Shown: piece by piece, positions 11,896 to 49,780 of the stretch
Layout of the letters: every line of letters starts with the position of its first letter
How positions within the stretch are numbered: the stretch's first letter is position 1
DNA from: Octopus sinensis
Lineage: Eukaryota
Length of the DNA stretch: 64,000 bases
Reading direction: 5' to 3'
Assembly (NCBI RefSeq): GCF_006345805.1
Contig: NC_043004.1
Location: 39,804,001 to 39,868,000 of the forward strand
Notes under the pieces: model-generated
Seen by the model: the letters and a program-made list of their open reading frames with translations, nothing else
Told to the model about the DNA's origin: nothing
The model's database searches: none
Position numbers and translations under genes: made by a program

Positions 11896-12304
11896 GTATT
11901 TCTTCCGACATTACGTTCTTGATTCAAATGCCATCTGGGTCGACTTTGCTTTTTCTTCCTTTCGGGGTTGGTAAAGTAAGTACCAGCTGAGCACTGGGGG
12001 CGATGTAATTGACTTATCCTCTCGCCCGAAATTGCTGGTCTTGTGCCAAAATTTGAAACCGTCGTTGATGTTGTTATTATTATTTCCGCTTGATGCATAT
12101 TTACTTATTTGTTTGTCTGTTTTTATTCATTTCTATTTAATATTTTCCAATCGAACATCATACACACTGCAACTCTACCGTTTGGAAATAAGGCCCGGTA
12201 ATGACCCCAGTTCATTGTCCGTGTGGCACGTAAAGAAATTAAAAATTACTATTTATGTTAGACGCTGGAAATCATTATTTTTTATTGTTGTATTATTGTT
12301 GTTA

Positions 12305-12689
12305 GTGGAAGCGCAATGGCCCAGTGGGTAGGGCAGCGGACTCGCGGTCATAGGATCGCGGTTTCGATTCCCAGACCGGGCGTTGTGAGTGTTTATTGAG
12401 CCAAAACATCTAAAGCTCCACGAGGCTCCGGCAGGGGATGGTGGTGATCCTTGCTGTACTCTTTCACCACAACTTTCTCTCACTCTTACTTCCTGTTTCT
12501 GTTGTACCTGTATTTCAAAGGGCCGGCCTTGTCACTCCCTGTGTCACGCTGAATATCCCCGAGAACTATGTTAAGGGTACACGTGTCTGTGGAGTGCTCA
12601 GCCACTTACACGTTAATTTCACGAGCAGGCTGTTCCGTTGATTCGGATCAACCGGAACCCTCGTCGTCGTAACCGACGGAGTGCTTCCA
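12305..12689 (+). mobile_element. tRNA-derived SINE family C (TCG at the anticodon position, Arg-like), followed by (ATT)n
   Basis: Head GCGCAATGGCCCAGTGG.TAGGGCAGCGGACTCGCGG...GGTTTCGATTCCC; near-identical reverse copy at 21813-22188; tail-only fragment at ~33206-33268. Confidence 0.9.
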
Positions 12690-21812: not shown

Positions 21813-22188
21813 TGGAGCACTCCGTCGGTTACGACGACGAGGGTTCCGGTTGATCCGATCAACGGAACAGCCTGCTCGTGAAATTAACGTGTAAGTGGCT
21901 GAGCACTCCACAGACACGTGTACCCTTAACGTAGTTCTCGGGGATATTCAGCGTGACACAGAGAGTGACAAGGCCGGCCCTTTGAAATACAGGTACAACA
22001 GAAACAGGAAGTAAGAGAAAGTTGTGGTGAAAGAGTACAACAGGGATCACACCATCCCTGCCGGAGCCTCGTGAAGCTTTTAGGTGTTTTCGCTCAATAA
22101 ACACTCACAACGCCCGGTTTGGGAATCGAAACCGCGATCCTACGACCGCGAGTCCGCTGCCCTAACCACTGGGCCATTGCGCCTCCAC
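21813..22188 (-). mobile_element. SINE family C
   Basis: Reverse complement of 12305-12689; flanked by (ACAT)n on both sides. Confidence 0.9.
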
Positions 22189-22677
22189 ATACATACATAC
22201 ATACATACATACATACACATTATACACACATATACCCACACAGAAACACAGACATAAGCGTGTGAAATATATATACTTCCATGTACTCAAAAAAGGAGCA
22301 CAGAGACAAAAAATAAACGTGTCACAGACACCCAAAATACTCAACCGTTCAAAAAAACACTTTCATAAGCAAATTATTCAAATTATTGCACATACAGGAA
22401 CCCATAACGAAATATATACTTATTTTCAGAGAGTTATGTTTTTTTTGTTTTTTTTTACCTCTCTTCTTTCTTTGACAAGTAAATTAACTGAAATGTAATC
22501 GGGCGAAGTAAGACAAATTATGTTCTACGTTAAGTGAATAAAACTCTTAATTTTGTCAATTTGCAGAAAAATAAGTGTTAGGTTTTCTATGTGTGTATGT
22601 TAGTAAGAATATATGTCTGTATGTATCCTTGTCGTACGTATTCACGTACGTTATTGATACATATATGTATGTGTATG

Positions 22678-24038: not shown

Positions 24039-24138
24039 NNNNNNNNNNNNNNNNNNNNNNNNNNNNNNNNNNNNNNNNNNNNNNNNNNNNNNNNNNNNNN
24101 NNNNNNNNNNNNNNNNNNNNNNNNNNNNNNNNNNNNNN
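24039..24138. other. Assembly gap (100 N)
   Basis: Run of N. Confidence 1.
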
Positions 24139-24515: not shown

Positions 24516-24579
<64 letters not shown>

Positions 24580-25153
24580 GAATGTATGTACATGTATACA
24601 TGTATACACACACATATGCATATGTATATATATTATGTGCTTATATATATATATATATATATATATCACAATCAAGGAACGGCCATAATAGGCCATTCAC
24701 CCACTAGAAATAACAGCCAAAAAGCTTCAACCGCAAAATAACATTAATTCTGTAAACCAGGAGAAAATTAAAAAAACATTTACCCTGAAATTCCTTATAC
24801 GATGCACCGTTTCGTCTACTGTTTAATGGTAAACTAACCTGATTAAATTAAATCAAGCCAATCTACCTATTATGGCCGTTCCTTGATTGTGATATTGAAC
24901 TTAAAAATGGTTTATGACTATTTAATTTTTTCCCACTAGGCCGCTGGGGGCAAAAGAATTCTACAAAATTTTTTTTGCCTCCCTATATTGATTAATTATG
25001 AATTTTCTGGTTAGTTCCGTAATGGAATCGGCGGCTTATATTTATTTGCTGCCGATAATTTGGCGCGAGTGCGACGATTTGAAAATTTTAGGTCAGATAT
25101 TGGCGACGCATGGACGTGAATGCCTCGTGAAAAATATCTGTTCCGATTTGGCT

Positions 25154-25259
25154 ATTCCTTACTGATGAATCTAAGGGCCTATGGTAGATTGGCTTGATTT
25201 AATTAATCAGGTTAGTTTACCATTAAACAGTAGACGAAACGGTGCATCGTATAAGGAAT
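25154..25259 (+). ncRNA. Type I hammerhead ribozyme, copy 1 (predicted cleavage after 25251)
   Basis: Stem I ATTCCTTA/TAAGGAAT; CTGATGA 25162-25168; long stem II; GAAA 25236-25239; stem III ACGG-TGCA-TCGT; GUA triplet. Confidence 0.88.
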
Positions 25260-25643
25260 TTCAGGGTAAATGTTTTTTTAATTTTCTCCTGGTTTACAGA
25301 ATTAATGTTATTTTGCGGTTGAAGCTTTTTGGCTGTTATTTCTAGTGGGTGAATGGCCTATTATGGCCGTTCTTGATTGTGATATTGAACTTAAAAATGG
25401 TTTATGACTATTTAATTTTTTCCACTAGGCCGCTGGGGGCAAAAGAATTCTACAAAATTTTTTTTGCCTCCCTATATTGATTAATTATGAATTTTCTGGT
25501 TAGTTCCGTAATGGAATCGGCGGCTTATATTTATTTGCTGCCGATAAATTTGGCGCGAGTGCGACGATTTGAAAATTTTAGGTCAGATATTGGCGAGGCA
25601 TGGACGTGAATGCCTCGTGAAAAATATCTGTTCCGATTTGGCT

Positions 25644-25750
25644 ATTCCTTACTGATGAATCTAAGGGCCTATGGTAGATTGGCTTGATTTAATTTAATCA
25701 GGTTAGTTTACCATTAAACAGTAGACGAAACGGTGCATCGTATAAGGAAT
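25644..25750 (+). ncRNA. Type I hammerhead ribozyme, copy 2 (predicted cleavage after 25742)
   Basis: Same elements as copy 1; CTGATGA 25652-25658, GAAA 25727-25730. Confidence 0.88.
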
Positions 25751-26135
25751 TTCAGGGTAAATGTTTTTTTAATTTTCTCCTGGTTTACAGAATTAATGTT
25801 ATTTTGCGGTTGAAGCTTTTTGGCTGTTATTTCTAGTGGGTGAATGGCCTATTATGGCCGTTCCTTGATTGTGATATTGAACTTAAAAATGGTTTATGAC
25901 TATTTAATTTTTTCCACTAGGCCGCTGGGGGCAAAAGAATTCTACAAAATTTTTTTTGCCTCCCTATATTGATTAATTATGAATTTTCTGGTTAGTTCCG
26001 TAATGGAATCGGCGGCTTATATTTATTTGCTGCCGATAAATTTGGCGCGAGTGCGACGATTTGAAAATTTTAGGTCAGATATTGGCGACGCATGGACGTG
26101 AATGCCTCGTGAAAAATATCTGTTCCGATTTGGCT

Positions 26136-26242
26136 ATTCCTTACTGATGAATCTAAGGGCCTATGGTAGATTGGCTTGATTTAATTTAATCAGGTTAGTT
26201 TACCATTAAACAGTAGACGAAACGGTGCATCGTATAAGGAAT
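26136..26242 (+). ncRNA. Type I hammerhead ribozyme, copy 3 (predicted cleavage after 26234)
   Basis: Same elements as copy 1; CTGATGA 26144-26150. Confidence 0.88.
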
Positions 26243-26979
26243 TTCAGGGTAAATGTTTTTTTAATTTTCTCCTGGTTTACAGAATTAATGTTATTTTGCG
26301 GTTGAAGCTTTTTGGCTGTTATTTCTAGTGGGTGAATGGCCTATTATGGCCGTTCCTTGATTGTGATATTGAACTTAAAAATGGTTTATGACTATTTAAT
26401 TTTTTCCCACTAGGCCGCTGGGGGCAAAAGAATTCTACAAAATTTTTTTTGCCTCCCTATATTGATTAATAAATATATATATATATATATATATCAGCAC
26501 ATAATATATATACATATGCACATGTGTGTATATACATGTACATACATTCATAAATATATATACATATATACACATACAATTTAAACGAAGTTGAACTGAC
26601 AGTTCGAGAATATGATTTAGTATGGTTGCCTCTGGGGAATTGAAAAATGACGATTTTGACAATTCTCCAAATAATTCCACAAATAACCATCTGGAATTGT
26701 CTGTCGACTGGATCTCTATTAGCTATTCACTTTACTCTTCATCTAGTACTGAGTTCTTTCTAATTATGCGTGTATTTACATCACTGCAATATTGTAAGGT
26801 GTACATACATACATACATACATACATACATACATACATACATACATACATACATACATGCATGCATACATGCATACATGCATACATGCATACATACATAC
26901 ATACATGCATACATACATGTATATATATAGGTGAGAAAGTTGGTGTGTGAAAGCACGTGGTTGGATGTATAAAAAATAG

Positions 26980-27215
26980 AAAAGCGTGAAAAAACTATAG
27001 AAGGCTTGTCTTATAAGGTTAAAGAATATATTTAAGTCGTTATGTTAGAAAAATGTTATAGAATTTTGTGTATAGTAACATAGTTTACACGAAACCGGTT
27101 ATTTCTCCAAAAACTGTTACTAAACACAAAATTTTATAACATTTTTCTAACATAACGACTTAAATATATTCTTTAACCTTATAAAACAAGCCTTCTGCAG
27201 TTTTTTCACTCTTTT
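26980..27215. repeat. Fold-back repeat (~105-bp arms) related to a Penelope-like 3' region
   Basis: Arms 26980-27086 / 27111-27215; right arm matches 40957-41033 downstream of the GIY-YIG relic. Confidence 0.85.
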
Positions 27216-27217
27216 CT

Positions 27218-27280
<63 letters not shown>

Positions 27281-27381: not shown

Positions 27382-28672
27382 CGAGGGACGTTCAATAAGT
27401 AATGCCTCTGACCCACTTGCATTTGTTTGATCTAGCTGAAATTTTGCATGTGCAATTATTTATATATCTATAGAGTAAGTGGCAAATTACAGCTCTGAAT
27501 TAATTGTGGTTTCTGATTTACAGGTGTTTGAACCGAGTCAAGTGTGAAATGGAGCCTGTTGAGTGTCGAGCAGTGATCCGGTTTTTGTATTTGAAAGGAC
27601 GCACACCACGGCAGACTTTTGATGAAATGAAAGTAACTTATGGTGATGATGCCCCATCATATGACCTTGTAAAACGCTGGCATCGTGAATTCAAACATGG
27701 TCGGAACTCTGTGGAAACAGCTCCCAGATCTGGTCGCCCCCTTCTGCCATTGATGAGGCATCTGTCTGTCAAGTTGAGGCTGCCATTTTGGAAGATCGAT
27801 GCATAATTATTTGCCAAATAGCCCATGAGGTCAAGATTAGTACCGGGTCTGTGGAAACTATCATTCATGACCATTTGCATATGCAAAAGGTGTCTGCCAG
27901 ATGGATTCCCAGGTTGCTCACGCCTTTCCAGAAGCAAGAACGCGTCGAGTGCTCGAGAGTGAATTTGGAGATGTGCCAAGAAGATGAGTCAAAATTTTTC
28001 AAAAGACTGATTAAACAGGATGAAACCTGGGTCCATCACGATGATCCAGAGACCAAAGCCCAGTCAATGCAGTGGAAGCACCGTGACTCACCCCCTCCAA
28101 AGAAGGCAAGGATGCAGCCCTCCGCTGGCAAGGTCATGCTCACAGTCTTCTGGGACCAGGACGGAGTAGTGATGACAGATTTCCTGGCAAAGGGTACCAC
28201 AATTGCAGGAGCCTATTATGCTTCACTTTTGAGGAAATTAAGAGAAGTTATCAAAATCAAGAGGCGGGGCAAGATCAGCAAAGGCATCCTCCTCCTGCAG
28301 GACAACGCTCCGGTCCACAACTTGCTTGTCGCCAGATCAGAAGCACAGGCGTATGGCTATGAACTCCTCCCCATCCCACCTACTTTCCTGACCTTGCACC
28401 GTCTGATTTTCACCTCTTCCCAATCATGAAGTTGTTTTTGAAAGGAAAGCGTTTCCCAGATGATGCAACCTTGATTTCTGAAGTCACGTTGAGGTTGGAG
28501 GACCAAGCTGGGTTCTTCTACAAAAACGGTCTCTAGAGCCGCATCAAACGATGGGAGAAATTCGTAACTCTGGGTGGTTCCTATGTAGAAAAAGACTAAT
28601 AACTGTGCCAAGTTTCGTTGCTCTACTGCTATGGGAAGTGGGTCAGGGGCATTACTTATTGAACGCCCCTCG
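27382..28672 (+). mobile_element. Full-length mariner transposon, 1291 bp, TA TSD
   Basis: TIRs CGAGGG(A/G)CGTTCAATAAGTAATGCC(T/C)CTGACCCACTT at both ends, each flanked by TA. Confidence 0.97.
27549..28599 (+). pseudogene. Mariner transposase (DD34D), two frameshifts and a premature stop
   Basis: MEPVECRAVIRFL...PRSGRP; WIPRLL; QDETW; QDNAP + 34 residues to D in PDLAPSDFHLF; frameshifts near 27740 and 28375; TAG near 28535. Confidence 0.95.
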
Positions 28673-30224: not shown

Positions 30225-30795
30225 CTAGGTACAGGGCTCGGAATTTGGGGAAAGGGGCCGGTCACTTAGATCGACTCCAGTACGCAACTGGTACTTAATT
30301 TATCGACCCCGAAAGGATGAAAGGCAAAGTCGACCTCGGCGGAATTTGAACTCAGAACGTAAAGACAGACGAAATACCTATTTTTATACTACCAACAATG
30401 GGTTAAACATAGAGGGGACAAACAAGGACAGACAAACGGATAAAGTCGATTATATCGACCCCAGTGCGTAACTGGTACTTATTTAATCGAGCCCGAAAGA
30501 ATGAAAGGCAAAGTCAACCTCGGCGGAATTTGAACTCAGAACGTAAAGACAGACGAAATACCTGTTTCTTTATTACCCACAAGGGGCTAAGCATAGAGAG
30601 GACAAACAAGGACAGACAAACGGATTAAGTCGATTATATCGACCCCAGTGCGTAACTGGTACTTATTTAATCGAGCCCGAAAGAATGAAAGGCAAAGTAG
30701 ACCTCGGCGGAATTTGAACTCAGAACGTAACGGCAGAGGAATTACCACTACGCATTTCGCTCGGCGTGCTAACGTTTCTGCCAGCTCGCCGCCTT
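30225..30795 (-). repeat. Head-to-tail multimer of SINE family B (184-bp period)
   Basis: GAACTCAGAACG at 30348, 30532, 30716. Confidence 0.9.
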
Positions 30796-31904
30796 AAGTT
30801 GTTAACATATTAATATAAGGTCTGTGTCCAATGCTGTTATAACTGATTCAGATGTGCTTCAATAATTTTAATAAATATATTTATTGCTCTGTATTTGATC
30901 TGTGTTTTGACAAAAAAAATATATTGGGAAAACTAAAAATTTTGATGATTCTTTGGTTGCACAAAGATTAAATATTAACGTAGTGAAATCTGTCAAGTGA
31001 CGGGACGTCGTATTTAGTACCTAAGAATAGTGAGATTTTCTTCGGCGGATAAGTTTTGTTTCTTCTATGTAATCTTCGTTACATTCATTGCATTAAAAAG
31101 CGTAAATAAATTTTTTGACGAACTGGTGAAGTGAATTTATTTTCATTGACTATATGGCCTTATTTAAATTTATCTAATATAAAGACAGATAACATATATA
31201 CATACATATACATGTATACTTATATACATGCACATATAATCATATATGTAATCACAGACATGTGTGTACATATATGCTTGTTTATGAGACATATTTCATT
31301 ATATGTGTGTGGTGTGTGTATGTATGTATGTATGTATGTATGTATGTATGTATGTATGTATGTATGTATGTATGTCATTATTCAGTTTTATTTCAAGATT
31401 TTTGCCAGTAGGGAAAGAACCGGTTTCTACCCTAGATCCAAGGCTCCTTCCTTGGGATTTCAACATTAACAACTGGGTATTTTTGTTTGTCTGAATGTAT
31501 GTATGAATGTATGTATTTACATTTGTGTGTGTGTATATATATATATATATATTATATATATATATATATACATATACATATACAATACGTAAGATTAAAT
31601 GGTTATTAAATACACGTCCGCACAACGGAGTATGTATTTAAAAAATCACTCCACCGCTCAGCATACAAATAAGTCTCCACATTGAAGATAAATTCTAATT
31701 TGGGTTTGATTTAAATAATGATAAATTCTCTTCTTTCGCAGAGCAATGAGTGAGCCATTGTTCTTTGATAAGTAGTCAACCATCCAAGAAACACCTCACA
31801 ACAATCTCTTTTATATTTCTGTAAGAAAAAAGTATTAAGACATATTCTTCTTATTCACTTTTTGTCGTAGTTTAACTATGTTTTAACTGCAACCAGACGC
31901 ATGC

Positions 31905-32290
31905 GTGGGTGGCTGTGTGGCAAGAGCTTTACCCTAGAAGGCGACGAGTTGGCAGAAACGTTAGCACGCCGGGCGAAATGCTTAGCGGTATTTCGTCTGC
32001 CGTTACGTTCTGAGTTCAAATTCCGCCGAGGTCGACTTTGCCTTTCGTCCTTTCGGGGTCGATAAATTAAGTACCAGTTACGTACTGGGGTCGACGTAAT
32101 CGACTTAATCCCTTCGTCTGTCCTTGTTTGTCCCCTCTATGTTTAGCCCCTTGTGGGCAATTAAGACATAAGACGTTTCCCCTACAGCCACCCCGTTCGT
32201 GGTTCAGTTCTACTACGTGGTGCTAAGGGCAAAGCCTGGAGAGTGGATTTAATAGACGGAAACTGAAAGAAGATCGTTGTGTGTGTGTGT
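31905..32290 (+). mobile_element. SINE A interrupted by a SINE B insertion (~31938-32170)
   Basis: Family A head, then a complete family B copy, then family A body resumes. Confidence 0.7.
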
Positions 32291-40495: not shown

Positions 40496-41033
40496 TGCGT
40501 TGTCTGTCAAAACTACGTAGGTTCAACGGGATTATCGCTCAGGCGCAGATACACTCTGCATCGACAACAGATTGCATTCCCAGAATACAGAATGATGCCC
40601 TTTAGTGAACATATTGAGAAATACGCAAAGCAACTACTACCAAAATTTTTAATCTTTCCATTCTATCAATGTGCTATTGGAACACCAGCACAAATTAGAT
40701 TAAACAGGGAAGCATTCTTCATTGAAAAATATAAACCAAAACTTAACCATTCTAACATTTTTATACAAGGAAACTCATGTCATTGAAAGAAGAAAAGAAA
40801 TATAAAGCGATTATCTCCCTTATACCGGAAGAAATCCCTGATTACCTTCCCCTGTCTGGAACTCTTCACTTCATAACGAAGACATGACACGGTGTAGGCA
40901 AAGTAATTTGAGAAATTTGAAAAGAATAAACGAAACCGGTTACACAACATTTTCTAACATTTTTCTAACATAACGACTTAAATATATTCTTTATCCTTAT
41001 AACACAAGCCTTCTGTAGTTTTTTCACTCTTTT
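40496..41033 (+). pseudogene. Penelope-like element 3' end: GIY-YIG endonuclease relic plus downstream region
   Basis: CVVCQNYVGSTGLSLRRRYTLH...RLNREAFFIEKYKPKLN matches the PLE 'C..C...YVG.T...L..R...H ... RE..FI.......LN' pattern. Confidence 0.8.
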
Positions 41034-41181
41034 TATTTTGTATACATCCAAACACGTGCATCCACACACCAACTCTCTCATTATATATATATATATTATA
41101 TATATATATATAGTATATAATATTATGTGTGGTGTGTGTGTGTGTTGTAATATATGTATATATATATGTATATATATATAT

Positions 41182-48739: not shown

Positions 48740-49780
48740 GTATCTCGAGAGCAGTTCAAAAATTCTATTAATGATCTACTCGTTAGTCCACAGAATAGAC
48801 AGGGATTCCTCGAAGCAGAGACGGCATCTCCTGGAAATTATATTGTATGGTTTCGTGTACCTTACTATGGACCAATTTATGCTGTACTTCATTTTATCCT
48901 TCTTCAGTCGCCATACAAAATCTGCGAACGATGTTGAATGTCTGTTATTGATTGTCTTAAAGCTGGCAACATGGTTATGATAACAATTCTTAAATGAATC
49001 AGCCGTCTGCCCAATGTAAACATACAGCCCTCCCCTTGTGTGTACAGTACATTTATACACAAGATTTGTATTCATACAGAGATTCATCAAAGGACATTTT
49101 TATTTTTCTCTGCATGAGCATTTATCGTATTCATTTGTATATAAGACTGTCCTGACTCTATTTACCAGCGTTGTTTCCGTGTTAGCTGTATCATAAGTAT
49201 TTCTACTACTACAAATTGGTCATAATTGGTGTTTATCATTGCGGTTTACATCTCCTTAGTTGGTATTTAGATGCAAATATTCGCTAGATCCAGTAGGTGG
49301 GCTAGTGAACCTTTGCCACATTTTGCTATTGTTTATACTATGCATACGCTGCTCTAAATTATCAGAGTTGGTGTAGGATACCTTCACGGTGTGTCGATTA
49401 AAAATAGCATGATACCGATTAGATTTAAGAAAACACTTGTCCAAAGTAGCAAAAAATTTCCCAGCGATCTTGGTTGAAACATGCGAACCGAAAATCGGGT
49501 TGAACCAGAGGGCATCCTGATTCCTATATCTGTTGTTAGGCTTATTTGATCGAGTGTGTTGTACAGGATTGGAACAAGCAGTTGAATTATTATGTCGCAT
49601 GTGGCTACGAGTTTTCGTTGGTAGTTCATTGATATGACCAATTCTTCCTGGCCTGTGTAATTTTTCTGGGTGAGTTCTCAAACCGTTGAGGTGATATACA
49701 ATGTGTATCACAGCTGGAGGAATTACCAGTGTTGTGTGTGCCTGCTTCTTGTATATATTGAATTGTTTCACGATACCAAG
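48740..49780 (-). pseudogene. Penelope-like element ORF C-terminus (RT thumb/linker + GIY-YIG), degenerate
   Basis: RNQDALWFNPIFGSHVSTKIAGKFF..LDKCF...IFNRHTVKVSY and LVYKCTV...YIGQTADSFKNCYHNHVASF...ST.FADFVWRLK...WSI...Y...CRLC.EE, typical of Neptune/Naiad-type PLEs. Confidence 0.9.

What the first reader, a model, noticed from the sequence alone, without database searches (positions are those of the whole stretch)
24866..26470. Retrozyme-like tandem array: 491-bp units each with a type I hammerhead, predicted to release circularisable monomers
Seen: ~3.3 near-identical units. Each has stem I AUUCCUUA/UAAGGAAU (8 bp), CUGAUGA, a 67-68-nt stem II, GAAA, stem III ACGG-UGCA-UCGU with a palindromic tetraloop, and a GUA triplet. 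Cleavage would release 25252-25742 (491 nt) and 25743-26234 (492 nt). No ORF of 60 aa or more. Known: non-LTR retrozymes in metazoans are tandem type I hammerhead repeats a few hundred nt long that yield circular RNAs and are thought to be mobilised by Penelope-like elements. Inference: a large-monomer cephalopod retrozyme; the long stem II could hide it from minimal-hammerhead searches. I cannot confirm from here that it is undescribed.
Basis: partly seen in the sequence, partly recalled or inferred. Interest (0 to 1): 0.95.

Follow-up and report, generated by a model that had tools for sequence, protein, structure and literature searches.

The report
Octopus hammerhead-ribozyme tandem repeat (retrozyme-type)
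A short tandem repeat in an octopus genome carries a complete but unusual self-cleaving hammerhead ribozyme in every unit and looks like a freshly inserted retrozyme, a known kind of small non-coding mobile element, here in a form that standard ribozyme searches miss.

Summary
A 491/492-bp unit is repeated 3.3 times at 24866-26470 with 99% identity. Three complete type I hammerheads would cut after 25251, 25742 and 26234. There is no ORF of 60 aa or more. The motif is not chance: a relaxed descriptor finds only these three sites in the window, none in 200 shuffles, and none in 76 kb of Octopus bimaculoides DNA.

It meets every structural criterion of animal non-LTR retrozymes. Shared interspersed repeats place the window in an octopus.

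- A 205-nt inverted, 5'-truncated copy (24663-24867) lies head-to-head with the array.
- The element sits in the (TA)n centre of an older palindrome. Both features are the published insertion signature of Penelope-like elements.
- The single hammerhead fold is not the predicted minimum. Two copies are predicted to form a double hammerhead with a 12-bp helix III.
- Rfam 15 finds no hammerhead here at any threshold.

A 491-nt monomer is not exceptional; published consensus lengths run from 51 to 972 bp. Cleavage, circular RNA, other genomic copies and covariation could not be tested, because no eukaryotic DNA collection was available. The A10.1·C11.1 mismatch leaves activity uncertain.

Verdict: a new member of a known kind with an unusual ribozyme. 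Interest is moderate.

The parts
24553..24662 (.). Left arm of an older flanking palindrome, ending in a (TA)n tract. This is the presumed target site.
   Evidence: A local alignment of 24553-24662 with the reverse complement of 26475-26576 gives about 90% identity with 8 nt of indels. The repeat finder pair I5 gives 83% without gaps.
24663..24867 (-). Inverted, 5'-truncated partial copy covering unit positions 422-491 plus 1-134. It carries the 3' two-thirds of a hammerhead but no CUGAUGA box, so this ribozyme is incomplete. It lies head-to-head with the array and shares a 2-nt CC overlap with it.
   Evidence: The segment is 205 nt long and 100% complementary to 25673-25877 and 26165-26369. 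BLAST and alignment confirm this. Its 5' end lies at unit position 422, at the base of the long helix II hairpin, which spans unit 421-462.
24866..25251 (+). Unit 0, 5'-truncated. It starts at unit position 106, is 386 nt long, and ends at cleavage site 1.
25154..25259 (+). Hammerhead 1. Stem I 5' strand 25154-25161; CUGAUGA 25162-25168; helix II 25169-25235 (67 nt); GAA 25236-25238; helix III 25239-25250; A17 at 25251; stem I 3' strand 25252-25259.
25252..25742 (+). Unit 1, a full monomer of 491 nt between cleavage sites.
25644..25750 (+). Hammerhead 2. Helix II spans 25659-25726 (68 nt), the long hairpin spans 25672-25713, and A17 is at 25742.
25743..26234 (+). Unit 2, a full monomer of 492 nt.
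26136..26242 (+). Hammerhead 3. Helix II spans 26151-26218 and A17 is at 26234.
26235..26470 (+). Unit 3, 3'-partial (unit positions 1-236). It ends in GATTAAT against the (TA)n tract.
   Evidence: The first 131 nt of the array (24866-24996) are 100% identical to its last 131 nt (26340-26470) (family D5).
26475..26576 (.). Right arm of the flanking palindrome, starting with a (TA)n tract.

Best explanation
This is a young insertion of a non-autonomous, non-coding retroelement of the animal non-LTR retrozyme kind in an octopus genome.

Shown by the sequence:
- There are 3.3 almost identical 491/492-bp units.
- Each full unit carries a complete type I hammerhead on the + strand.
- A 205-nt inverted, 5'-truncated copy lies head-to-head with the array.
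- The whole structure sits in the (TA)n centre of an older 110-bp-arm palindrome.

Inferred life cycle:
1. The array is transcribed as a multimer.
2. Helix III is short (4 bp) and has a palindromic UGCA loop. Two ribozymes therefore pair into a double hammerhead with a 12-bp helix III and cut after GUA.
3. [quoted passage not shown]
4. A host tRNA ligase of the RtcB type circularises these RNAs.
5. The circle, or a multimer, is copied by the reverse transcriptase of an autonomous element. A Penelope-like element is the most likely source.
6. Copying is primed on a nick in a (TA)n tract, and going round the circle gives tandem cDNA units.
7. Priming from the second target strand gives the inverted truncated copy.

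The ribozyme departs from the canonical type I form in two ways. Helix II has 4 bp, an internal loop and a 19-bp G·U-rich hairpin. The base of helix II has an A10.1·C11.1 mismatch instead of G-C.
For: Repeat and ribozyme anatomy are confirmed.

The motif is not chance: it gives 0 hits in 200 shuffles and 0 hits in 76 kb of octopus DNA.

The structure is specific to the + strand:
- The long helix II hairpin folds at -21 kcal/mol (z -7.7) on the + strand and -5.6 kcal/mol (z -2.1) on the - strand. It has 5 G·U pairs among its 19 pairs.
- The whole hammerhead domain has z -5.1 on + and z -2.4 on -.

The double hammerhead is predicted:
- Two ribozyme domains cofold at -82.7 kcal/mol, against 2 x -35.7 kcal/mol when folded apart. 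The cofold has a 12-bp helix III and unpaired cores.
- The same pairing appears in the minimum-energy fold of a 1121-nt three-ribozyme transcript.

The circular monomer folds at -139 kcal/mol (z -4.7), and G+C is 36%.

There is no ORF of 60 aa or more. Pfam finds no RT or endonuclease domain in ORFs of 75 aa or more across roughly 21-29 kb.

The flanking palindrome arms are about 90% identical, while the element copies are 99-100% identical. The element is therefore younger than its target.

Literature:
- Non-LTR retrozymes are defined as tandem repeats with type I hammerheads, low G+C and no LTR, PBS or PPT. They are expressed as circles and occur in molluscs (PMC7229834).
- Consensus lengths run from 51 to 972 bp, and the elements derive from pseudo-LTRs of Penelope-like elements (bioRxiv 10.64898/2026.07.22.740005).
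- The axolotl retrozyme ribozyme HHR_Amex2 has a U·U mismatch at the base of helix II and still cleaves, better as a dimer.
Against: - Only this one locus could be examined. There are no other copies in the 64-kb window or in 76 kb of O. bimaculoides DNA.
- No collection of eukaryotic DNA or transcripts was available. Mobility, family size, expression and covariation are therefore untested.
- Searches by ORF and by pattern in the protein, viral and metagenome collections found nothing related.
- No Rfam hammerhead model matches.
- G10.1-C11.1 is replaced by A·C in all three copies. From established hammerhead biochemistry this is expected to lower activity.
- The minimum-energy fold of a single ribozyme pairs the core UGAUG with CAUCG of helix III, which is an inactive form.
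- The inverted-copy architecture could also arise from twin priming by a LINE-type enzyme. It therefore does not single out Penelope-like elements.
- An assembly gap lies 525 bp to the left. Four of the five differences between units are homopolymer lengths, so copy number and small details may carry assembly error.
Confidence: 0.65

Rival explanations
1. The array is a dead relic. It descends from a retrozyme or from the terminal repeat of a Penelope-like element, but this ribozyme no longer cleaves. The cause would be the A·C mismatch at 10.1/11.1, the 47-nt expansion of helix II, and a competing inactive fold. The locus would then behave as an ordinary minisatellite and make no circles.
For: - All three copies have A10.1·C11.1.
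- The minimum-energy fold is inactive.
- No Rfam hammerhead model matches, even on the isolated motif.
- A GUAGA direct repeat 47 nt apart inside helix II (25674 and 25721) suggests a secondary insertion into a once shorter helix.
Against: - The units are 99-100% identical, so the array is young.
- All other core positions are intact: C3-A9, G12-A14, A15.1-U16.1 and H17.
- The helix II extension is a perfect 19-bp helix specific to the + strand with G·U pairs, not decayed sequence.
- The predicted double hammerhead removes the competing fold.
- A validated axolotl retrozyme ribozyme tolerates a mismatch at the same place.
Confidence: 0.2
2. The array was built purely at the DNA level. A hammerhead-bearing sequence was amplified locally by replication slippage or unequal crossing-over. 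The inverted segment came from a fold-back rearrangement at a fragile (TA)n palindrome, with no reverse transcription at this locus.
For: - AT-rich palindromes are known fragile sites.
- The flanks form a 110-bp-arm palindrome.
- The outer 131 nt at the two ends of the array are identical to each other and differ from the inner units at one site. That pattern is compatible with unequal exchange.
- The Li et al. preprint itself proposes local amplification of units derived from Penelope-like elements.
Against: - The inverted copy and the array end at different unit positions (134 and 236). The junction is not a simple fold-back of neighbouring sequence.
- The flank arms are about 10% diverged while the element copies are identical, so the element did not arise together with the palindrome.
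- Head-to-head 5' truncation with 2-nt microhomology, and 3' ends abutting (TA)n, is the pattern described for Penelope-like element insertions.
Confidence: 0.1
3. Part of the architecture is an assembly artefact. Copy number, the inverted segment or the single-base differences would come from mis-assembly of near-identical repeats next to a gap.
For: - A run of 100 N lies at 24039-24138, 525 bp from the element.
- Four of the five differences between units are homopolymer lengths.
- PMC8557442 notes that such tandem/inverted insertions often cause assembly problems.
Against: - The left side is not the reverse complement of the adjacent right side.
- The left flank differs from the right flank by about 10% with indels. 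A chimeric fold-back read is therefore unlikely.
- The ribozyme-bearing unit exists whatever the copy number.
Confidence: 0.05
4. The hammerhead-like motif occurs by chance in an ordinary satellite.
For: Rfam gives no support.
Against: - The descriptor gives 0 hits in 200 dinucleotide shuffles of 64 kb on both strands.
- It gives 0 hits in 76 kb plus 20 kb of real eukaryotic DNA, even when relaxed.
- All 11 invariant core bases are present, together with three helices in the right register.
- A self-complementary helix III fits the known dimeric mode.
Confidence: 0.01

Closest known systems
Non-LTR retrozymes of invertebrates, for example Mytilus galloprovincialis (350-390 bp repeats) and Acropora millepora (220-240 bp), described by Cervera & de la Pena 2020 (PMC7229834)
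   Same: - Tandem few-hundred-bp units, each with a type I hammerhead.
- Low G+C (36% here).
- No ORF, LTR, PBS or PPT.
- The monomer is predicted to fold into a stable, branched, self-paired circle.
- The host is a mollusc.
   Different: - The monomer is somewhat longer, at 491 nt.
- Helix II is 67-68 nt with an internal loop, instead of a short capped helix.
- The base of helix II has an A·C mismatch.
- Helix III is short, so a dimeric mode is predicted, whereas invertebrate retrozyme ribozymes are described as efficient single motifs.
- Expression and cleavage are not shown here.
Amphibian retrozymes and newt satellite 2 (axolotl Rtz_331 with HHR_Amex1 and Rtz_353 with HHR_Amex2)
   Same: - Helix III is very short and capped by a palindromic tetraloop.
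- Single-motif activity is poor and dimers cleave efficiently.
- HHR_Amex2 also has a mismatch (U·U) at the base of helix II.
   Different: - These are vertebrate families with 330-350 bp units, up to about 120,000 copies, and canonical short helix II with loop 1-loop 2 contacts.
- There is no sequence similarity to the present unit that I could test.
Minimal type I hammerheads in the pseudo-LTRs of Penelope-like elements (Cervera & de la Pena 2014; Craig et al. 2021, PMC8557442)
   Same: - Type I topology.
- Tandem/inverted insertion architecture: partial tandem plus an adjacent inverted 5'-truncated copy.
- Preference for a microsatellite target.
   Different: - Penelope-like elements are 3-4 kb and encode RT plus a GIY-YIG endonuclease. 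The 491-bp period here leaves no room for an ORF, and no RT or endonuclease domain was found nearby.
- The pseudo-LTR ribozymes are minimal, whereas this one has an expanded helix II.
Rfam Hammerhead_1 (RF00163) and the other Rfam hammerhead families
   Same: The catalytic core is the same (CUGAUGA ... GAAA ... UH) and so is the three-helix junction.
   Different: The sequence does not score against any Rfam 15 hammerhead model, even at E<=10 on the isolated 136 nt. By comparison, 235 Hammerhead_1 matches were reported in the giant squid genome (PMC6962438).

Membership tests
Hammerhead ribozyme, type I | Conserved core: C3 U4 G5 A6 N7 G8 A9, G12 A13 A14, the A15.1-U16.1 pair, and H17 (not G) at the cleavage site | tested here: met
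   All three copies have CUGAUGA, GAA, A15.1/U16.1 and A17 in the right order and spacing.
Hammerhead ribozyme, type I | Three helices around the core, with helix I open (closed only by the rest of the molecule) | tested here: met
   Helix I has 8 bp. Helix II has 4 bp, an internal loop and 19 bp. Helix III has 4 bp plus a UGCA loop. The order is I-5', core, II, GAAA, III, site, I-3'.
Hammerhead ribozyme, type I | G10.1-C11.1 pair at the base of helix II (quasi-conserved) | tested here: not met
   All copies have A10.1·C11.1. There is a precedent for a mismatch at the base of helix II: the axolotl HHR_Amex2 ribozyme has U·U there and is active.
Hammerhead ribozyme, type I | Match to a curated covariance model (Rfam Hammerhead_1 or a relative) | tested here: not met
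   No hammerhead family was reported at gathering score or at E<=10.
Hammerhead ribozyme, type I | Site-specific self-cleavage | not testable with these tools
   This needs in vitro transcription of monomeric and dimeric constructs.
Animal non-LTR retrozyme | Tandem repeat whose consecutive units each hold a complete type I hammerhead (at least two in a row) | tested here: met
   The array has 3.3 units and three consecutive complete motifs. The criterion is taken from the Li et al. preprint.
Animal non-LTR retrozyme | Non-coding, without LTR, PBS or PPT, and with low G+C (<45-50%) | tested here: met
   The longest ORF is 55 aa. The unit has no terminal repeats. G+C is 36.4%. The criteria come from PMC7229834.
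Animal non-LTR retrozyme | Monomer size within the described range | tested here: met
   The units are 491/492 bp. The described ranges are 150-450 bp, 51-972 bp, and circles from 150 to over 1000 nt.
Animal non-LTR retrozyme | Multi-copy, dispersed family in the genome (evidence of mobility) | not testable with these tools
   There is no other copy in the window or in 76 kb of O. bimaculoides DNA. No eukaryotic genome collection was available. The protein, viral and metagenome routes were negative.
Animal non-LTR retrozyme | Expressed as linear and circular monomer RNAs | not testable with these tools
   No transcriptome access was available.
Animal non-LTR retrozyme | Co-occurrence with Penelope-like elements in the host lineage | not tested
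   This rests on literature only. Penelope elements are reported in the giant squid genome, and Naiad-type remnants in Architeuthis, Euprymna and Octopus. No RT or GIY-YIG domain was detected by Pfam in the parts of the window that were scanned.
Autonomous Penelope-like element | ORF encoding a reverse transcriptase, usually with a GIY-YIG endonuclease | tested here: not met
   The 491-bp period has no ORF of 60 aa or more. Pfam finds only a mariner transposase nearby.
Autonomous Penelope-like element | Insertion architecture: partial tandem, adjacent inverted 5'-truncated copy, microsatellite target | tested here: met
   against the description in PMC8557442. This feature concerns how the element was inserted, not what it is.

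The most novel reading that the evidence does not exclude
The locus may represent an unrecognised variant class of type I hammerhead. Its features would be helix II expanded by an internal loop and a long G·U-rich hairpin, a non-canonical 10.1/11.1 pair, and obligate dimer action. Such a class would be invisible to Rfam and probably to standard descriptors. Retrozyme families in cephalopods, and perhaps elsewhere, would then be under-counted.

The locus may also preserve an intact integration scar: 3' ends in (TA)n on both sides, head-to-head 5' truncations, and different start points on the unit. If so, it would directly tie rolling-circle reverse transcription of a circular retrozyme RNA to target-primed, twin-primed integration by a Penelope-like enzyme.
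Probability: 0.25. Interest if true: 0.6.

Novelty: new member of a known kind. Interest (0 to 1): 0.4.

Why it matters
Retrozymes are the main natural source of ribozyme-made circular RNAs in animals. How they are mobilised is still inferred mainly from co-occurrence with Penelope-like elements.

If confirmed, this locus would matter in three ways:
- It adds a cephalopod example. No paper in the searched library describes one.
- It shows that a fully formed core can sit in a scaffold that current covariance models miss, so ribozyme censuses are incomplete.
- It offers a single, young insertion whose junctions look like those of Penelope-like elements. That makes the proposed mobilisation route testable, by collecting more junctions of this family from the genome.

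The kind of element is known, so none of this overturns current understanding.

Tried and rejected
- **Rfam.** I ran three searches: the whole window at gathering score, 2.3 kb at E<=10, and 136 nt at E<=10. No hammerhead family appeared. The only hits were sub-threshold microRNA-like matches in the low-complexity flanks, which I treat as chance.
- **Exact look-up of a unit ORF.** The 54-aa ORF that spans the ribozyme is not on record in the assembly collection.
- **Protein search with the whole unit.** I used all six frames of the circularised unit, 986 aa with X at stops. 8000 word candidates were collected and none was significant.
- **Exact DNA pattern scans.** Both viral-contig scans found nothing. 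The metagenome-contig scan gave one match in a G+C-rich bacterial coding contig. I read it and rejected it as chance.
- **Full-text search for stretches of the ribozyme sequence.** No papers matched.
- **Search for a nearby autonomous partner.** Pfam scans of ORFs of 75 aa or more around the array and over most of the window found only mariner domains.
- **The GIY-YIG-looking ORF pair at 48779-49780.** No Pfam or PDB sequence support was found, so I do not claim it.
- **tRNA-like or SINE origin of the unit.** There is no tRNA and no similarity to the window's SINEs.
- **Host identification through the mariner.** This was uninformative. The best named hit is a mantis shrimp protein, and the closest DNA matches are unnamed Logan and ENA contigs. 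The lineage-specific SINE gave the answer instead.
- **Fold-back sequencing artefact.** I rejected this because the flank arms are about 10% diverged and the arms are not mirror images.
Full report
**What is in the sequence**

Tandem Repeats Finder reports one array at 24866-26470 with period 492, 3.3 copies and 99% matches. When the units are aligned in the register of the predicted cleavage site, they differ at only five positions. Four are single-base differences in homopolymer runs and one is a C/G substitution.

BLAST of one unit against the window finds no other copy in 64 kb except a reverse-strand segment directly upstream. This is a 205-nt stretch at 24663-24867. It is 100% complementary to units 2 and 3 and covers unit positions 422-491 and 1-134. 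It meets the array head-to-head, and the two share the bases CC at 24866-24867.

The real extent of the element is therefore 24663-26470.

**The ribozyme**

Three complete motifs lie at 25154-25259, 25644-25750 and 26136-26242. Each reads as follows:
- Stem I 5' strand: AUUCCUUA.
- Core: CUGAUGA.
- Helix II: 67 or 68 nt.
- GAA, then A15.1.
- Helix III: CGG-UGCA-UCG, closed by U16.1.
- A17, followed by the stem I 3' strand UAAGGAAU.

All invariant core bases are present. Cleavage after A17 falls at 25251, 25742 and 26234.

Helix II consists of an A10.1·C11.1 mismatch, four pairs (UCUA/UAGA), an internal loop, and a perfect 19-bp hairpin with five G·U pairs. The one length difference among the three ribozymes is a single U in the terminal loop of that hairpin.

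**Is it chance?**

I wrote a descriptor for type I hammerheads. It allows a mismatch at 10.1/11.1, helix II up to 120 nt, helix I of at least 5 bp and helix III of at least 3 bp. Results were as follows:
- It hits only the three sites on either strand of the window.
- It hits nothing in 200 dinucleotide-preserving shuffles of the whole window.
- A looser version hits nothing in 76 kb of Octopus bimaculoides DNA or in a 20-kb unrelated contig.

The motif is real.

**Strand specificity**

The long helix II hairpin folds at -21 kcal/mol (z -7.7) as + strand RNA. It folds at only -5.6 kcal/mol (z -2.1) as - strand RNA, because its G·U pairs become A·C there. The whole ribozyme domain has z -5.1 on the + strand and -2.4 on the - strand. 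This is what an RNA-level structure on the ribozyme strand would give. With one family member it remains suggestive only.

**How it would cleave**

The minimum-energy fold of one 107-nt domain does not form helix III. It pairs UGAUG of the core with CAUCG at -35.7 kcal/mol, while the catalytically competent fold is at -32.7 kcal/mol.

The helix III segment ACGGUGCAUCGU is self-complementary, giving 12 bp with two G·U pairs at -17.5 kcal/mol. Two domains cofold at -82.7 kcal/mol, against -71.4 kcal/mol for two separate domains. The cofold has both cores free and the stem I strands swapped, which is the classical double hammerhead. The same pairing appears in the minimum-energy fold of a 1121-nt transcript that holds all three ribozymes.

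A short helix III capped by a palindromic tetraloop is how newt and axolotl retrozyme ribozymes are built, and those work as dimers (PMC7229834). I therefore expect multimeric transcripts to be processed through ribozyme pairs, not by each ribozyme alone. This is a prediction, not a result.

**Doubts about activity**

G10.1-C11.1 is replaced by A·C in every copy. From established hammerhead biochemistry this pair is nearly invariant and lies next to a metal site, so lower activity is likely. The axolotl HHR_Amex2 ribozyme has a U·U mismatch at the base of helix II and still cleaves: 22% in an hour as a monomer, and much better as a dimer. A mismatch there is therefore not disqualifying.

A GUAGA direct repeat 47 nt apart inside helix II (25674 and 25721) suggests that the long hairpin arose by an insertion into a shorter helix. 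This is speculation.

**Why databases miss it**

Rfam 15 reports no hammerhead family for the window at gathering score, for 2.3 kb at E<=10, or for the isolated 136 nt at E<=10 with the laxest filters.

**The monomer as RNA**

Folded as a circle, the 492-nt + strand has a minimum free energy of -139 kcal/mol (z -4.7, 61% of bases paired) and 36.4% G+C. There is no ORF of 60 aa or more. The longest with a start codon is 55 aa, and the longest open stretch in any frame of the circular unit is 47 aa. No tRNA-like part was found.

**The insertion site**

The element is bracketed by an inverted repeat, 24553-24662 against 26475-26576. The arms are about 90% identical with 8 nt of indels, and their inner ends are (TA)n tracts. 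The arms are clearly more diverged than the element copies, which are 99-100% identical. The palindrome was therefore there first, and the element landed in its (TA)n centre.

The 3' end of the inverted copy (unit position 134, ...GUGAUAU) and the 3' end of the array (unit position 236, ...GAUUAAU) both abut (TA)n. At the left junction 4 nt (ATAT) are shared between unit and flank. The two 5' ends meet in the middle with 2 nt of overlap.

Two different start points on the unit fit a template without a fixed 3' end, meaning a circle or a multimer. Cervera and de la Pena proposed that a target-primed circular RNA yields tandem cDNA copies. The architecture here fits that model, with priming from both target strands. 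Twin priming by a LINE enzyme could give a similar picture, so the identity of the mobilising enzyme remains an inference.

**Artefact check**

A run of 100 N lies at 24039-24138, 525 bp to the left. Four of the five unit differences are homopolymer lengths. Copy number and these details may therefore carry assembly error.

A fold-back chimera is unlikely. The left side is not the mirror image of the adjacent right side, the two element ends differ (134 and 236), and the flank arms differ by about 10%.

**Surroundings**

Pfam finds only a mariner/Mos1-type transposase remnant (HTH_48 and Transposase_1) at about 27.5-28.4 kb. No reverse transcriptase or endonuclease appears in ORFs of 75 aa or more around the array or in most of the rest of the window. 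The element is non-autonomous, and no partner is visible nearby.

**Host**

The mariner was uninformative. The best named relative is from a mantis shrimp, and the closest DNA matches are in unnamed Logan and ENA contigs.

A SINE that litters the window gave the answer:
- An ORF read from it has a single database hit, an Octopus bimaculoides protein (78% identity, E 1e-18).
- The 76 kb of O. bimaculoides chromosome around that gene shares 185 repeat matches with the window (median identity 83%, up to 95%).

The window is from an octopus or a close relative. 'Cephalopod' is supported.

**Relatives of the element**

None could be reached:
- The exact ORF look-up failed.
- The six-frame protein search found nothing.
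- The viral and metagenome pattern scans found only one chance match.
- The full-text sequence search found nothing.

No eukaryotic genome or transcriptome collection was on hand. Family size, mobility, expression and covariation are therefore untested.

**Comparison with what is known**

Animal non-LTR retrozymes are defined as follows: tandem few-hundred-bp repeats with a type I hammerhead per unit, low G+C, no LTR, PBS or PPT, and abundant linear and circular RNAs. They are probably mobilised by Penelope-like elements and occur from cnidarians to molluscs and amphibians (PMC7229834).

[quoted passage not shown] It reports consensus lengths of 51-972 bp and shows that retrozymes are related to the terminal repeats of Penelope-like elements.

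The present locus meets every structural criterion. It fails only the quasi-conserved G10.1-C11.1 pair and the Rfam model match. Its size is unremarkable.

The giant squid genome paper lists 235 Rfam Hammerhead_1 hits. Hammerheads in cephalopods are therefore known, but no paper in the searched library describes a cephalopod retrozyme.

**Verdict**

This is a real element of the retrozyme type, recently formed, in an octopus. It is a new member of a known kind. Its ribozyme scaffold is unusual and escapes standard models, and its insertion scar looks like that of a Penelope-like element. Activity and mobility remain to be shown. Interest is 0.4.

Noticed in passing
window 24039-24138: A run of 100 N (an assembly gap) lies 525 bp upstream of the element. 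The neighbourhood is very rich in (TA)n, (TACA)n and (CA)n microsatellites.
   Followed up: partly
window 27504-28426 (+): This is a mariner/Mos1-type transposase remnant (Pfam HTH_48 and Transposase_1). It is about 95% identical in DNA to a Logan contig (SRR9105617_4105) and about 94% identical to part of an ENA contig (ERZ25073763). It is 84% identical in protein to a 'GVQW3-like' protein of the mantis shrimp Oratosquilla oratoria. This may be a mariner shared across phyla.
   Followed up: partly
window 26965-27080 / 27115-27230, and 40941-41047: A 116-bp-arm palindrome (91% complementary, 34 nt spacer) lies 500 bp downstream of the array. A related arm (about 91%) lies at 40941-41047. It looks like a MITE or fold-back repeat family.
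   Followed up: no
window 30266-30746 and many dispersed sites (e.g. 31879-32136, 12256-12531, 21982-22220): A SINE-like repeat containing ...GGCGGAATTTGAACTCAGAACG... occurs many times in the window and once as a 184-bp x 2.6 tandem. An ORF read from it has a single database hit, Octopus bimaculoides LOC106868243. This is what places the window in an octopus.
   Followed up: yes
window 48779-49099 (-) and 49259-49780 (-): Two adjacent ORFs on the minus strand look by eye like a GIY-YIG-type nuclease (..LVYKCTV...YVYIGQT..) preceded by a conserved ..FNP.F...V.T.. region. Pfam gives no hit even at E<=10, and the PDB sequence search gives nothing meaningful, so the resemblance is unconfirmed. 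There is no reverse transcriptase next to it.
   Followed up: partly
window 25674 and 25721 (and the same positions in the other units): A GUAGA direct repeat 47 nt apart lies inside helix II. Removing one repeat and the intervening sequence would leave a 21-nt helix II of ordinary size, which suggests that the long hairpin is a secondary insertion. The 5' end of the inverted partial copy (unit position 422) falls at the base of this hairpin (unit 421-462).
   Followed up: no
window 24560-24633 and 26509-26578: Rfam gives sub-threshold matches to mir-297, mir-466 and mir-3149 (about 49 bits at most, against gathering scores of 85-100). They fall in the TA/TG-rich palindrome arms that flank the element. 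I judge them to be low-complexity hairpin matches, not microRNA genes.
   Followed up: no
window 24866-24996 vs 26340-26470: The first and last 131 nt of the array (unit positions 106-236) are 100% identical to each other. They share a CCC variant that the two inner units lack. I have no explanation; unequal exchange, the way the array was made, or assembly could each be the cause.
   Followed up: no
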